A stretch of 64,000 bases of DNA from Octopus sinensis (taxonomy: Eukaryota). Numbering within the stretch: position 1 is the first letter of the stretch; each line of letters opens with the position of its first letter. The notes under the pieces were generated by a model. It saw nothing but the letters and a program-made list of their open reading frames with translations. It was not told the origin of the DNA and made no database searches. The stretch spans positions 97,960,001-98,024,000 of the forward strand of contig NC_043003.1 of NCBI RefSeq assembly GCF_006345805.1, in the 5' to 3' direction. Below, piece after piece: positions 12,586 through 16,061 of the stretch. The translations under genes and the position numbers were made by a program.

Positions 12586-12732
12586 ATATATATATATATA
12601 TATATCAACATCACAATCAAGGAACGGCCATAATAGGCCATTCACCCACTAGAAATAACAGCCAAAAGCTTCAACCGCAAAATAACATCAATTCCGTAAA
12701 CCAGGAGAAAATTAAAAAACATTTACCCTGTA

Positions 12733-12839
12733 ATTTCTTATACGATGCACCGTTTCATCTACTGTTTAATGGTAAACTAACCTGATTAAATTAAATCAAG
12801 CCAATCTACCATAGGCCCTTAGATTCATCAGTAAGAAAT
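12733..12839 (-). ncRNA. Type I hammerhead ribozyme, array copy 1
   Basis: Reverse complement of the 15743-15849 motif; appears identical by eye. Confidence 0.9.
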
Positions 12840-13221
12840 AGCCAAGTCGGAACAGATATTTTTCACGAGGCATTCCCGTCCCTGCCTCGGCAATATCTGA
12901 CCTAAAATTTTCAAATCATCGCACTCGCGCCAATTTATCGGCAGCAAATAAATATAAGCCGCCGATTCCATTACGGAATTAACCAGAAAATTCATAATTA
13001 ATCAATATAGGGTGGCAAAAAATTTTGTAGAATTTTTTTTGCCACCAGCGGCCTAGTGGGAAAAAATTAAATAGTCATAGACCATTTTTAAGTTCAACAT
13101 CACAATCAAGGAACGGCCATAATAGGCCATTCACCCACTAGAAATAACAGCCAAAAGCTTCAACCGCAAAATAACATCAATTCCGTAAACCAGGAGAAAA
13201 TTAAAAAACATTTACCCTGTA

Positions 13222-13328
13222 ATTTCTTATACGATGCACCGTTTCATCTACTGTTTAATGGTAAACTAACCTGATTAAATTAAATCAAGCCAATCTACCA
13301 TAGGCCCTTAGATTCATCAGTAAGAAAT
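13222..13328 (-). ncRNA. Type I hammerhead ribozyme, array copy 2
   Basis: As copy 1. Confidence 0.9.
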
Positions 13329-13711
13329 AGCCAAGTCGGAACAGATATTTTTCACGAGGCATTCCCGTCCCTGCCTCGGCAATATCTGACCTAAAATTTT
13401 CAAATCATCGCACTCGCGCCAAATTTATCGGCAGCAAATAAATATAAGCCGCCGATTCCATTACGGAATTAACCAGAAATTTCATAATTAATCAATATAG
13501 GGTGGCAAAAAATTTTGTAGAATTTTTTTTGCCATCAGCGGCCTAGTGGGAAAAAATTAAATAGTCATAGACCATTTTTAAGTTCAACATCACAATCAAG
13601 GAACGGCCATAATAGGCCATTCACCCACTAGAAATAACAGCCAAAAGCTTCAACCGCAAAATAACATCAATTCCGTAAACCAGGAGAAAATTTAAAAACA
13701 TTTACCCTGTA

Positions 13712-13818
13712 ATTTCTTATACGATGCACCGTTTCATCTACTGTTTAATGGTAAACTAACCTGATTAAATTAAATCAAGCCAATCTACCATAGGCCCTTA
13801 GATTCATCAGTAAGAAAT
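13712..13818 (-). ncRNA. Type I hammerhead ribozyme, array copy 3
   Basis: As copy 1. Confidence 0.9.
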
Positions 13819-14200
13819 AGCCAAGTCCGAACAGATATTTTTCACGAGGCATTCCCGTCCCTGCCTCGGCAATATCTGACCTAAAATTTTCAAATCATCG
13901 CACTCGCGCCAAATTTATCGGCAGCAAATAATATAAGCCGCCGATTCCATTACGGAATTAACCAGAAATTTCATAATTAATCAATATAGGGTGGCAAAAA
14001 ATTTTGTAGAATTTTTTTTGCCACCAGCGGCCTAGTGGGAAAAAATTAAATAGTCATAGACCATTTTTAAGTTCAACATCACAATCAAGGAACGGCCATA
14101 ATAGGCCATTCACCCACTAGAAATAACAGCCAAAAGCTTCAACCGCAAAATAACATCAATTCCGTAAACCAGGAGAAAATTAAAAAACATTTACCCTGTA

Positions 14201-14307
14201 ATTTCTTATACGATGCACCGTTTCATCTACTGTTTAATGGTAAACTAACCTGATTAAATTAAATCAAGCCAATCTACCATAGGCCCTTAGATTCATCAGT
14301 AAGAAAT
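14201..14307 (-). ncRNA. Type I hammerhead ribozyme, array copy 4
   Basis: As copy 1. Confidence 0.9.
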
Positions 14308-14690
14308 AGCCAAGTCCGAACAGATATTTTTCACGAGGCATTCCCGTCCCTGCCTCGGCAATATCTGACCTAAAATTTTCAAATCATCGCACTCGCGCCA
14401 AATTTATCGGCAGCAAATAAATATAAGCCGCCGATTCCATTACGGAATTAACCAGAAATTTCATAATTAATCAATATAGGGTGGCAAAAAATTTTGTAGA
14501 ATTTTTTTTGCCACCAGCGGCCTAGTGGGAAAAAATTAAATAGTCATAGACCATTTTTAAGTTCAACATCACAATCAAGGAACGGCCATAATAGGCCATT
14601 CACCCACTAGAAATAACAGCCAAAAGCTTCAACCGCAAAATAACATCAATTCCGTAAACCAGGAGAAAATTAAAAAACATTTACCCTGTA

Positions 14691-14797
14691 ATTTCTTATA
14701 CGATGCACCGTTTCATCTACTGTTTAATGGTAAACTAACCTGATTAAATTAAATCAAGCCAATCTACCATAGGCCCTTAGATTCATCAGTAAGAAAT
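14691..14797 (-). ncRNA. Type I hammerhead ribozyme, array copy 5
   Basis: As copy 1. Confidence 0.9.
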
Positions 14798-15252
14798 AGC
14801 CAAGTCGGAACAGATATTTTTCACGAGGCATTCCCGTCCCTGCCTCGGCAATATCTGACCTAAAATTTTCAAATCATCGCACTCGCGCCAAATTTATCGG
14901 CAGCAAATAAATATAAGCCGCCGATTCCATTACGGAATTAACCAGAAATTTCATAATTAATCAATATAGGGTGGCAAAAAATTTTGTAGAATTTTTTTGT
15001 CACCAGCGGCCTAGTGGGAAAAAATTAAATAGTCATAGACCATTTTTAAGTTCAACATCACAATCAAGGAACGGCCATAATAGGCCATTCACCCACTGGT
15101 GGCAAAAAAATTCTACAAAATGGAATCGGCGGCTTATATTTATTTGCTGCCGATAAATTTGGCGCGAGTGCGATGATTTGAAAATTTTAGGTCAGATATT
15201 GTCGAGGCAGGGACGGGAATGCCTCGTGAAAAATATCTGTTCCGACTTGGCT

Positions 15253-15359
15253 ATTTCTTACTGATGAATCTAAGGGCCTATGGTAGATTGGCTTGATTTA
15301 ATTTAATCAGGTTAGTTTACCATTAAACAGTAGATGAAACGGTGCATCGTATAAGAAAT
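15253..15359 (+). ncRNA. Type I hammerhead ribozyme, inverted-arm copy 6
   Basis: ATTTCTTA-CTGATGA-ATCTA...TAGAT-GAAACGG-TGCA-TCGTA-TAAGAAAT. Confidence 0.9.
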
Positions 15360-15742
15360 TACAGGGTAAATGTTTTTTAATTTTCTCCTGGTTTACGGAA
15401 TTGATGTTATTTTGCGGTTGAAGCTTTTGGCTGTTATTTCTAGTGGGTGAATGGCCTATTATGGCCGTTCCTTGATTGTGATGTTGAACTTAAAAATGGT
15501 CTATGACTATTTAATTTTTTCCCACTAGGCCGCTGGTGGCAAAAAAAATTCTACAAAATTTTTTGCCACCCTATATTGATTAATTATGAAATTTCTGGTT
15601 AATTCCGTAATGGAATCGGCGGCTTATATTTATTTGCTGCCGATAAATTTGGCGCGAGTGCGATGATTTGAAAATTTTAGGTCAGATATTGCCGAGGCAG
15701 GGACGGGAATGCCTCGTGAAAAATATCTGTTCCGACTTGGCT

Positions 15743-15849
15743 ATTTCTTACTGATGAATCTAAGGGCCTATGGTAGATTGGCTTGATTTAATTTAATCAG
15801 GTTAGTTTACCATTAAACAGTAGATGAAACGGTGCATCGTATAAGAAAT
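15743..15849 (+). ncRNA. Type I hammerhead ribozyme, inverted-arm copy 7 (predicted cleavage after A15841)
   Basis: Stem I ATTTCTTA (15743-50)/TAAGAAAT (15842-49); core CTGATGA (15751-57); stem II ATCTA/TAGAT extended by a 19-bp helix; GAAA (15826-29); stem III ACGG/TCGT with a TGCA loop; GUA site. Confidence 0.92.
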
Positions 15850-16061
15850 TACAGGGTAAATGTTTTTTAATTTTCTCCTGGTTTACGGAATTGATGTTAT
15901 TTTGCGGTTGAAGCTTTTGGCTGTTATTTCTAGTGGGTGAATGGCCTATTATGGCCGTTCCTTGATTGTGATGTTGAACTTAAAAATGGTCTATGACTAT
16001 TTAATTTTTTCCCACTAGGCCGCGTGCGTGTGTGGTCGTGTGTGTGCGCGGGCGTTTGCGA

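What the first reader, a model, noticed from the sequence alone, without database searches (positions are those of the whole stretch)
12606..16023. 490-bp tandem array in which every unit encodes a complete type I hammerhead ribozyme (candidate retrozyme / circRNA satellite)
Seen: seven essentially identical copies of ATTTCTTA-CTGATGA-ATCTA-[insert]-TAGAT-GAAA-CGG-TGCA-TCGT-A-TAAGAAAT spaced one unit apart. All core nucleotides are present, with an 8-bp stem I, a 5-bp proximal stem II, a 4-bp stem III with palindromic UGCA loop, and a GUA site. Established: hammerheads in tandem repeats (newt satellite 2, schistosome Sm-alpha, Dolichopoda pDo500, metazoan non-LTR retrozymes) self-cleave multimeric transcripts into monomers that can circularise. 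Inference: transcription through this array would release about 490-nt monomers, making it a non-coding, ribozyme-based mobile or circular RNA unit. I do not know of a described cephalopod family with this unit, but I could not search.
Basis: partly seen in the sequence, partly recalled or inferred. Interest (0 to 1): 0.95.

Follow-up and report, generated by a model that had tools for sequence, protein, structure and literature searches.

The report
Tandem repeat carrying hammerhead ribozymes (retrozyme)
A 490-base non-coding repeat, present seven times and carrying a complete self-cutting hammerhead RNA motif in every copy, looks like one more family of the known animal "retrozymes", which are mobile repeats that make small circular RNAs, so it is worth recording but is not a new kind of element.

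Summary
The repeat and the motif are real. Seven identical 107-nt type I hammerhead (HHR) motifs sit in 489/490-bp units between 12605 and 16023. They do not form one head-to-tail array. There are 5.09 units on the minus strand (12605-15097) and two units on the plus strand (15098-16023), joined 5'-to-5'. Every invariant core base is present: 8-bp helix I, 4-bp helix III with a UGCA loop, and a GUA cleavage site. A descriptor control gave 0 of 300 simulated windows with a motif this good. The motif is atypical in three ways. Helix II is a 68-nt arm, the 10.1-11.1 pair is A-U instead of G-C, and no Rfam hammerhead model reports it even at E<=10. The unit is non-coding, 37% GC, and strongly structured. 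Its outer ends abut (TA)n and (GT)n microsatellites. A Penelope-like element (RT + GIY-YIG nuclease) with its own minimal hammerhead lies 8 kb away, also inside (TA)n. My best reading is a non-LTR retrozyme family inserted by Penelope-type target-primed reverse transcription. Cleavage, circles, copy number and conservation could not be tested, because no related copy was found in any searchable collection. The host was not identified. It is a new member of a known kind, of moderate interest.

The parts
12605..15097 (-). Left arm: 5.09 units of the 489/490-nt repeat. The sense (ribozyme) strand is the minus strand. The sense 5' end is at 15097 (unit position 91) and the sense 3' end at 12605 (unit position 136). 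It holds four complete monomers between cleavage sites.
15098..15118 (+). Start of the right arm at the centre junction: sense unit positions 184-205. The join to the left arm has a 2-nt CT overlap, next to the intra-unit inverted repeat CUAGUGGG(89-96)/CCCACUAG(170-177). A 52-nt internal loss (unit 206-257) follows.
15119..16023 (+). Right arm: sense unit position 258 to 182. Together with 15098-15118 it makes exactly two turns of the unit (183/184 to 182). It has 1 mismatch in 905 nt against the complement of 14027-14931, and holds one complete monomer (15352-15841).
15743..15849 (+). Hammerhead motif, 107 nt. Helix I 15743-15750/15842-15849. Core CUGAUGA 15751-15757. Helix II arm 15758-15825. 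GAA 15826-15828. Helix III 15829-15840. A17 at 15841, with the cut between 15841 and 15842.
15253..15359 (+). Hammerhead motif, identical copy; A17 at 15351.
14691..14797 (-). Hammerhead motif, identical copy; A17 at 14699.
14201..14307 (-). Hammerhead motif, identical copy; A17 at 14209.
13712..13818 (-). Hammerhead motif, identical copy; A17 at 13720.
13222..13328 (-). Hammerhead motif, identical copy; A17 at 13230.
12733..12839 (-). Hammerhead motif, identical copy; A17 at 12741.
12586..12604 (.). (TA)n microsatellite abutting the sense 3' end of the left arm; presumed target.
16024..16106 (.). Degenerate (GT)n microsatellite abutting the sense 3' end of the right arm; presumed target.
1848..5040 (-). 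Penelope-like element and candidate source of the reverse transcriptase/endonuclease in trans. The ORF of about 750 aa has one frameshift near 4500-4527. It carries RVT_1 and GIY-YIG domains and is bounded by (TA)n on both sides. It has no sequence similarity to the 490-nt unit.
1915..1980 (-). Minimal hammerhead of that Penelope-like element, near its 3' end. Helix III is the loop-less palindrome ACCGGU, and the core pair C3-G8 is replaced by U3-A8.

Best explanation
The locus is an insertion of a non-autonomous, non-coding retroelement of the metazoan non-LTR retrozyme kind.

Inferred life cycle, by analogy with coral, mussel and axolotl retrozymes (PMC7229834):
- A multimeric transcript of the sense strand folds a type I hammerhead in every unit. 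The motif may act alone, since helix III has 4 bp. It may also act as a double hammerhead, because the helix III regions of two neighbouring units can form a 12-bp duplex.
- The RNA cuts itself after GUA. [quoted passage not shown]
- A host RtcB-type ligase closes the monomers into highly base-paired circles.
- The circular or multimeric RNA is copied into tandem cDNA by the reverse transcriptase/GIY-YIG nuclease of a Penelope-like element, at a microsatellite target.

What the sequence shows directly:
- The motif, the unit and its structure.
- The opposed arms, with both sense 3' ends facing outward onto (TA)n and (GT)n. That is what priming from both sides of one break would give.
- A Penelope-like element nearby.

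Still inferred: transcription, cleavage, circularisation and mobilisation.
For: - Motif: seven identical copies with every invariant core base and three helices.
- Chance control: 0 of 300 simulated 64-kb sequences gave an equally good motif.
- Folding: the catalytically competent fold costs only 1.9 kcal/mol more than the MFE (-32.4 vs -34.3). Helices I and II are part of the MFE of the fragment, of the linear monomer and of the circle.
- Dimer option: a helix III duplex between two copies scores -19.5 kcal/mol, against -1.2 for the hairpin.
- Unit properties: no stop-free frame longer than 60 codons, GC 36.7%, 63% of bases paired, fold z-score -6.65. These are the published retrozyme traits (PMC7229834).
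- Polarity: the ribozyme is on one strand only.
- Architecture: arms are joined 5'-to-5', and their 3' ends lie on (TA)n and (GT)n. This matches the tandem/inverted insertions and microsatellite bias described for Penelope-like elements (PMC8557442).
- Partner element: a Penelope-like element with RT + GIY-YIG and its own minimal hammerhead sits at 1848-5040, inside (TA)n.
- Age: units differ at only 6 columns, so the insertion is young.
Against: - No Rfam hammerhead model reports the motif, even at E<=10 on a 126-nt slice. The same kind of scan did pick up the minimal hammerhead of the Penelope-like element at 20.9 bits.
- The 10.1-11.1 pair, the most conserved stem pair of hammerheads (PMC3088659, PMC4209133), is A-U here.
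- No recognisable loop 1/loop 2 tertiary contact is present, and helix II is a 68-nt arm.
- Only one locus is available. No related copy was found in JGI metagenomes, IMG/VR, GTDB genomes or the protein collection. Mobility, copy number and selective conservation of the core are therefore untested.
- All six variable columns fall outside the motif, but that is expected by chance about one time in four.
- No target-site duplication is visible.
- The unit shows no similarity to the neighbouring Penelope-like element or to two relatives of it.
- Column 382 differs between adjacent pairs of units. A single rolling-circle copy of one circle would not give that.
Confidence: 0.65

Rival explanations
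1. It is a hammerhead-bearing satellite that grew and rearranged at the DNA level only, through unequal exchange or fold-back repair at the 8-nt inverted repeat inside the unit. It is not retrotransposed. The ribozyme may still process transcripts, as first thought for newt satellite 2 and cricket pDo500.
For: - The centre junction lies exactly at the intra-unit inverted repeat CUAGUGGG/CCCACUAG, with a 2-nt overlap. Fold-back priming after a break would produce this.
- The right arm is nearly identical to the adjacent left units, with 1 mismatch in 905 nt.
- No target-site duplication is visible, and no other locus was seen.
Against: - A fold-back would give arms symmetrical around the loop. 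Here the right arm ends at unit position 182 on a different microsatellite.
- Both outer ends are sense 3' ends on microsatellites, the known Penelope target type (PMC8557442).
- A simple inversion of a direct array predicts unit position 90 at the right flank, not 182.
Confidence: 0.2
2. It is an ordinary tandem repeat in which a hammerhead-like string arose by chance or has decayed, and the RNA does not cleave itself.
For: - No Rfam hammerhead hit.
- A10.1-U11.1 instead of G-C.
- No loop-loop contact motif, and an unusually long helix II.
- The MFE fold pairs part of the core (UGAUG) with the 3' strand of helix III.
- No conservation data.
- By my own rough extrapolation from the relaxed hit rate, a motif this good is expected less than once per Gb, so a large genome could hold one or two by chance.
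Against: - 0 of 300 simulated windows contain an equally good motif.
- The chance that such a motif falls inside a 490-bp tandem unit, the known context of type I hammerheads, is of the order of 1e-7 (my own rough extrapolation).
- All invariant bases are present, as are A15.1-U16.1, a palindromic loop 3 and a permitted GUA triplet.
- Natural compensatory changes at 10.1-11.1 are known (PMC2837043).
- Mussel retrozyme hammerheads also lack the canonical loop contacts and still cleave (PMC7229834).
Confidence: 0.1
3. It is the remnant of the pseudo-LTRs of an autonomous Penelope-like element whose coding part has been lost, not a separate non-autonomous family.
For: - Penelope-like elements carry hammerheads in their terminal repeats and form tandem/inverted structures (PMC4209133, PMC8557442).
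- A 2026 preprint derives retrozymes from such repeats (10.64898/2026.07.22.740005).
Against: - There are five plus two uninterrupted units with no trace of RT or nuclease coding sequence. tblastn with a Penelope protein hits only 2734-4973.
- There is no similarity to the window's element or to two relatives.
- The ribozyme has a canonical C3-G8 core and a 4-bp helix III. The loop-less minimal type is what this window's element and its relatives carry.
Confidence: 0.05

Closest known systems
Metazoan non-LTR retrozymes (coral Acropora, mussel Mytilus, axolotl; PMC7229834; vertebrate survey 10.64898/2026.07.22.740005)
   Same: - One type I hammerhead per unit of a short tandem repeat.
- Low GC, non-coding, no LTR.
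- Highly self-paired predicted circle in which the ribozyme helices remain free to form.
- Co-occurrence with Penelope-like elements.
- Like the mussel family, it has no canonical loop 1/loop 2 contact.
   Different: - The 490-nt unit exceeds the roughly 170-400 nt reported for invertebrates, though it lies inside the 51-972 bp range of the 2026 survey.
- Helix II is a 68-nt arm rather than about 4 bp plus a loop.
- A10.1-U11.1 replaces G-C.
- Helix I is 8 bp and uninterrupted.
- The locus is two opposed arrays.
- Expression and cleavage are untested.
Dolichopoda cave-cricket pDo500 satellite (PMC2837043)
   Same: - Unit of 463-505 bp with one hammerhead.
- Single and double hammerhead modes have been proposed.
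- A G-U pair in helix III.
- Natural variation at 10.1-11.1.
   Different: - The pDo500 hammerhead is compact (49 nt), and the family is conserved across 12 species, with the core more conserved than the rest.
- No sequence similarity was tested.
Newt/salamander satellite 2 hammerhead
   Same: - Type I motif in a tandem repeat.
- Palindromic loop 3 that allows two units to pair into a double hammerhead.
   Different: - Newt helix III has a single base pair and depends on dimers. Here helix III has 4 bp (one of them G-U) and could work alone.
- The unit is 330 bp, against 490 bp here.
Penelope-like element pseudo-LTR hammerheads (PMC4209133)
   Same: - Type I topology with a palindromic helix III region.
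- Tandem/inverted insertion architecture and microsatellite targets.
   Different: - Penelope hammerheads are minimal, with little or no helix III and a short helix I, and they flank an RT-endonuclease ORF.
- Here the core and helix III are canonical and there is no ORF.

Membership tests
Hammerhead ribozyme, type I | Invariant core C3 U4 G5 A6 N7 G8 A9 ... G12 A13 A14, A15.1-U16.1, H17 not G | tested here: met
   CUGAUGA ... GAA, A15.1-U16.1, and the triplet GUA with A17, identical in 7 copies.
Hammerhead ribozyme, type I | Three helices around the core, with helix I open and helices II and III closed | tested here: met
   Helix I is 8 bp, proximal helix II is 5 bp, and helix III is 4 bp. Both ends lie in helix I. 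The constrained fold is -32.4 kcal/mol against an MFE of -34.3.
Hammerhead ribozyme, type I | Conserved G10.1-C11.1 pair at the base of helix II | tested here: not met
   The pair is A10.1-U11.1 in all copies. The literature calls G-C the most conserved stem pair (PMC3088659), but natural compensatory changes exist (PMC2837043).
Hammerhead ribozyme, type I | Score at or above the gathering threshold of an Rfam hammerhead model (clan CL00010) | tested here: not met
   No hammerhead hit at gathering threshold, nor at E<=10 on 491 nt or 126 nt. The likely cause is the 58-nt insert in helix II. That cause could not be tested, because a trimmed sequence cannot be submitted.
Hammerhead ribozyme, type I | Loop 1/loop 2 tertiary contact, or a pseudoknot, for fast cleavage | tested here: inconclusive
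   There is no canonical loop 1. Helix II has an internal loop 5 bp from the core, which could stand in for loop 2. This is not decidable from sequence.
Hammerhead ribozyme, type I | Site-specific self-cleavage | not testable with these tools
   Needs in vitro transcription.
Metazoan non-LTR retrozyme | Short tandem repeat (about 150-450 bp, up to 972 bp in the latest survey) with one type I hammerhead per unit | tested here: met
   489/490-bp units, seven motifs.
Metazoan non-LTR retrozyme | Non-coding, low GC (<45-50%), no LTR | tested here: met
   The longest stop-free frame is 60 codons. GC is 36.7%. No terminal repeats other than the units themselves. PBS and PPT were not searched for specifically.
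Metazoan non-LTR retrozyme | Highly self-paired monomer or circle | tested here: met
   MFE is -156.5 kcal/mol with z = -6.65. The circular fold is -150.5 kcal/mol with 63% of bases paired.
Metazoan non-LTR retrozyme | Many dispersed genomic loci (mobility) | not testable with these tools
   There is only one locus in the window. No eukaryotic genome collection can be searched. The scans that could be run found only chance matches.
Metazoan non-LTR retrozyme | Expressed as linear and circular RNA | not testable with these tools
   No transcriptome access.
Metazoan non-LTR retrozyme | Co-existence with autonomous Penelope-like elements | tested here: met
   An RT + GIY-YIG element lies at 1848-5040. 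It has one frameshift, so this copy itself is probably dead.
Penelope-like element (pseudo-LTR) | Repeats flank an RT/GIY-YIG ORF | tested here: not met
   No coding sequence lies in or between the units.

The most novel reading that the evidence does not exclude
The locus may preserve the footprint of integration from a circular RNA template. The right arm is exactly two turns of the unit with adjacent, permuted ends (183/184 to 182). That is what one complete trip of a reverse transcriptase round a dimeric circle would give, or two trips round a monomer. The opposed left arm would be the product of priming from the other side of the same endonuclease break. If other copies show the same integer, permuted structure, this would be direct genomic evidence for the proposed but unproven circRNA-templated, Penelope-type twin-primed mobilisation of retrozymes. 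A second, weaker reading is that read-through transcription of the 905-nt inverted arms gives a long hairpin RNA that feeds small-RNA silencing, or editing, of the family.
Probability: 0.15. Interest if true: 0.7.

Novelty: new member of a known kind. Interest (0 to 1): 0.4.

Why it matters
Retrozymes are a recently recognised route to abundant small circular RNAs in animals. How they move is still a hypothesis.

- **Blind spot in annotation.** This hammerhead has a 68-nt helix II arm and an A-U pair at 10.1-11.1, and Rfam-based annotation misses it completely. Counts such as "235 Hammerhead_1 hits" in a cephalopod genome probably underestimate ribozyme-bearing repeats.
- **Evidence on mobilisation.** Its architecture has opposed arms with 3' ends on microsatellites, next to a Penelope-like element that also sits in (TA)n. 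This is the pattern expected if Penelope enzymes mobilise retrozymes, so the family could serve as a test case.
- **A practical tool.** A 490-nt self-processing unit is also a natural scaffold for expressing circular RNA.

None of this is a new principle.

Tried and rejected
- **Rfam at three stringencies**. There was no hammerhead hit for the array. I do not treat this as a refutation, because of the 58-nt helix II insert, but I record it as a failed membership feature.
- **Search for related copies.**
  - A JGI metagenome pattern scan gave 10 hits, all chance matches inside bacterial protein-coding sequence.
  - Two IMG/VR scans gave nothing.
  - A GTDB genome scan gave 5 hits with no upstream core. 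About 4 are expected by chance, by my own estimate from the size of the collection.
  - A composite six-frame translation of the unit against 5.8 billion proteins gave nothing.
  - An exact look-up of the 55-aa ORF gave nothing.
- **Host identification.**
  - The Penelope ORF has best hits of 63% identity on unnamed ENA/Logan contigs. Named hits are bivalves at 45-48%.
  - A LINE + integrase composite has best hits of 84% on unnamed ENA contigs.
  - An exact look-up of the Penelope ORF gave nothing.
  - The 'cephalopod' origin therefore remains unverified.
- **Similarity of the unit to the window's Penelope-like element, the rest of the window, or two Penelope relatives (L011, L012).** None was found.
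- **A coding reading of the unit.** Rejected, because no frame stays open for more than 60 codons.
- **A simple inversion of a direct array.** Rejected, because the end positions do not fit.
- **A trivial fold-back read artefact.** Unlikely, because the junction is not a perfect palindrome: 187 nt separate the arms, and there is an internal 52-nt loss. Misassembly still cannot be excluded without reads.
- **Conservation of the motif versus the rest among the seven copies.** Uninformative, because there are only 6 variable columns.
- **A flank comparison**. It showed a tRNA-derived SINE on the left and a foldback element on the right, but no interrupted element that would prove insertion.
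Full report
**1. Observation**

Tandem Repeats Finder reports a 490-bp period from 12605 to 15097 (5.1 copies, 99% matches). The repeat finder shows that 15119-16023 is the reverse complement of the same unit. The arms 14027-14931 and 15119-16023 are complementary over 905 nt, with one mismatch.

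The two halves of the proposed ribozyme, CTGATGAATCTA and TAGATGAAACGGTGCATCGTATAAGAAAT, each occur seven times without mismatch. Five copies are on the minus strand and two on the plus strand. The 29-mer is expected 0 times by chance.

The description as one head-to-tail array of seven units is not correct.

I numbered the unit from the first base after the cleavage site, so the unit is window 15352-15841. In these coordinates:
- The left arm runs on the minus strand from unit position 91 (window 15097) to position 136 (window 12605), which is 5.09 units.
- The right arm runs on the plus strand from position 183/184 (window 15098) to position 182 (window 16023). That is exactly two turns of the unit, apart from a 52-nt internal loss (unit 206-257, bounded by AAU on both sides) and one A-run contraction.
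- The arms therefore meet 5'-to-5', with a 2-nt CT overlap. The join lies next to an 8-nt inverted repeat inside the unit, CUAGUGGG at 89-96 and CCCACUAG at 170-177.
- Both outward ends are sense 3' ends.

Five complete monomers differ at six columns only. Two of those are T-run length differences, which explains the 489/490 alternation.

**2. Is the motif a hammerhead?**

Read on the sense strand, the 107-nt motif is:
AUUUCUUA / CUGAUGA / AUCUA-[58 nt]-UAGAU / GAA / ACGG-UGCA-UCGU / A | UAAGAAAU

- Every invariant core base is present. A15.1-U16.1 is present. The cleavage triplet is GUA.
- Helix I is open, so the motif is type I.
- A descriptor search of my own required the core strings plus at least 4, 3 and 2 bp in the three helices. 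In the window it finds only the seven array copies. It gave 0.057 hits per simulated 64-kb sequence, and none of 300 simulations reached the observed 8/5/4 bp.
- RNAfold places helices I and II in the minimum-free-energy structure of the 113-nt fragment (z = -5.45), of the linear monomer and of the circle.
- The fully competent fold with helix III costs 1.9 kcal/mol more than the MFE (-32.4 vs -34.3).
- The helix III region of two units can form a 12-bp duplex (-19.5 kcal/mol, against -1.2 for the hairpin). A double-hammerhead mode on multimeric transcripts is therefore available, as in newts and as discussed for metazoan type I motifs (PMC4209133).

Three points count against a textbook hammerhead:
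- No Rfam hammerhead model reports the motif at the gathering threshold, or at E<=10 on 491-nt or 126-nt slices.
- The 10.1-11.1 pair is A-U, whereas G-C is the most conserved stem pair (PMC3088659, PMC4209133). Compensatory changes at this pair do occur in the cricket pDo500 family (PMC2837043).
- There is no canonical loop 1/loop 2 contact, and helix II is a 68-nt arm: 5 bp, an internal loop, then a 19-bp helix. Mussel retrozyme hammerheads also lack the canonical contacts and still cleave, though more slowly (PMC7229834).

I attribute the Rfam failure to the 58-nt insert. I could not test that, because a trimmed sequence cannot be submitted to the tool.

**3. The unit**

- No reading frame on either strand stays open for more than 60 codons.
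- A composite of all stop-free segments finds no protein relative.
- GC is 36.7%, and 63% of bases are paired in the circular fold.
- The linear monomer folds at -156.5 kcal/mol, with z = -6.65 against shuffles.
- Only one strand carries a ribozyme.

These are the published traits of metazoan non-LTR retrozymes: short tandem repeats of low GC, without LTRs, with one type I hammerhead per unit, giving highly self-paired circular RNAs in which the ribozyme is free to fold (PMC7229834). The 490-nt unit is above the 170-400 nt reported for invertebrates. It is inside the 51-972 bp range of a recent vertebrate survey (10.64898/2026.07.22.740005) and close to the 463-505 bp of pDo500 (PMC2837043).

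**4. Surroundings**

The left arm ends on (TA)n (12586-12604). The right arm ends on a degenerate (GT)n (16024-16106).

About 8 kb away, at roughly 1848-5040 on the minus strand, lies a Penelope-like element:
- It has a 587-aa ORF with RVT_1 and GIY-YIG domains.
- The ORF continues upstream after one frameshift near 4500-4527.
- It is 63% identical to its best relative, and named relatives are bivalve proteins at 45-48%.
- It is bounded by (TA)n on both sides.
- Near its 3' end, at 1915-1980, it carries a minimal hammerhead that Rfam's HH9 model picks up weakly (20.9 bits, E = 0.21).

Penelope-like elements are described as forming partial tandems, often with an inverted 5'-truncated copy adjacent at the 5' end. 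They also show an insertion bias for microsatellites, including (TA)n and (CA)n (PMC8557442). The array has exactly that architecture. This is the main argument that it arrived by target-primed reverse transcription from both sides of one break, rather than by DNA-level satellite expansion.

The unit has no sequence similarity to this element or to two of its relatives. The partner, if any, is therefore a different Penelope family, or the relationship is only functional.

**5. Mechanism proposed**

- *Shown:* the motif, its fit to the hammerhead architecture, the structure and non-coding nature of the unit, the opposed arms on microsatellites, and a Penelope-like element nearby.
- *Inferred from the retrozyme literature (PMC7229834):* sense transcription gives multimers. 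[quoted passage not shown] A host tRNA ligase circularises them. A Penelope reverse transcriptase/endonuclease copies the RNA into tandem cDNA at microsatellites.

Because the arms diverge from the centre, sense transcripts must start inside the array. A transcript crossing the whole locus would carry ribozymes in one arm and their complement in the other, and could fold into a 905-bp hairpin.

**6. Rivals**

- *A satellite rearranged only at the DNA level (0.2).* The junction at the internal inverted repeat fits fold-back repair. The end positions do not fit a fold-back or a simple inversion.
- *A chance or dead motif (0.1).* The Rfam failure and the A-U pair speak for it. The descriptor control and the tandem context speak against it.
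- *A pseudo-LTR remnant of a Penelope-like element (0.05).* There is no coding trace, and the ribozyme is of a different type.

Misassembly of the inverted junction cannot be excluded without reads. The junction is not the perfect palindrome that a fold-back read artefact would give.

**7. What could not be done**

No eukaryotic genome or transcriptome collection is searchable here.
- Pattern scans of JGI metagenomes, IMG/VR and GTDB genomes returned only chance matches.
- Copy number, dispersal, empty sites, covariation and expression are therefore all untested.
- The host was not identified, so 'cephalopod' is unverified.
- The literature search found no paper describing retrozymes in cephalopods. 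However, 235 Hammerhead_1 hits are reported for the giant squid genome (PMC6962438).

**8. Verdict**

This is a real ribozyme-type tandem repeat, best filed as a new family of the known non-LTR retrozyme kind.
- It has an atypical hammerhead that standard annotation misses.
- It has an insertion architecture that supports the Penelope mobilisation hypothesis.
- Interest is moderate (0.4). It is not the near-unique finding that the first score of 0.95 implied.
- The exact two-unit right arm with permuted ends remains unexplained. It is the one feature that could become more interesting if other copies repeat it.

Noticed in passing
window 1848-5040 (-), hammerhead at 1915-1980 (-); L011 about 2640-2710; L012 about 2590-2660, 6460-6530, 10390-10460: The Penelope-like element's minimal hammerhead reads UUGAAAA...GAAACCGGUA, so the core pair C3-G8 is replaced by U3-A8. 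Related elements on two metagenome contigs read AUGAAUA...GAAACCGGUA (A3-U8). That is covariation at the core base pair among Penelope hammerheads. U3-A8 is known in nature (PMC3088659). I did not check whether A3-U8 has been reported.
   Followed up: partly
L012 (ENA contig ctg67919, 13.7 kb): At least three tandem Penelope-like ORFs of about 740 aa lie head to tail, each followed by the same minimal hammerhead. This is a clear example of the tandem organisation of these elements.
   Followed up: no
window 16211-16826, with partial copies at 25538-25793, 26374-26505, 40930-41126, 43917-44049: A foldback or MITE-like element with long inverted arms (84-99% complementary). Telomere-like (TTAGGG)n variants sit at its centre (16546-16591). 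There are several copies in the window.
   Followed up: no
window 12280-12457; 52222-52397 (-); 7062-7189: A tRNA-derived SINE immediately left of the array. One copy is 94% identical and another 78% identical elsewhere in the window.
   Followed up: partly
window 12030-12245 (+) and 27574-28035 (+): Two 3' fragments of one LINE family (reverse-transcriptase C-terminal region ending ...MMDREVWRSMVNSIVSTTVEQ, followed by an (ATG)n tail). The best protein relatives are 84% identical on unnamed ENA contigs.
   Followed up: partly
window 18325-18885 (-): A fragment of a retroelement integrase (Pfam rve, E = 1e-14) in a GC-richer stretch (49% GC at 18-20 kb).
   Followed up: no
window 24939-25011 (+): An intact-looking tRNA-Pro (AGG) gene (Rfam 54 bits, and ARAGORN).
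   Followed up: no
window 17780-18149: Two copies of a 183-bp tandem repeat, 96% identical. Its nature was not examined.
   Followed up: no
proteins P0035, P0052, P0059, P0095, P0111: Penelope-like RT/GIY-YIG proteins are filed in NCBI under bacterial symbiont genomes (Candidatus Thiodiazotropha, Solemya velum gill symbiont). These are probably host (bivalve) contamination of those assemblies.
   Followed up: no
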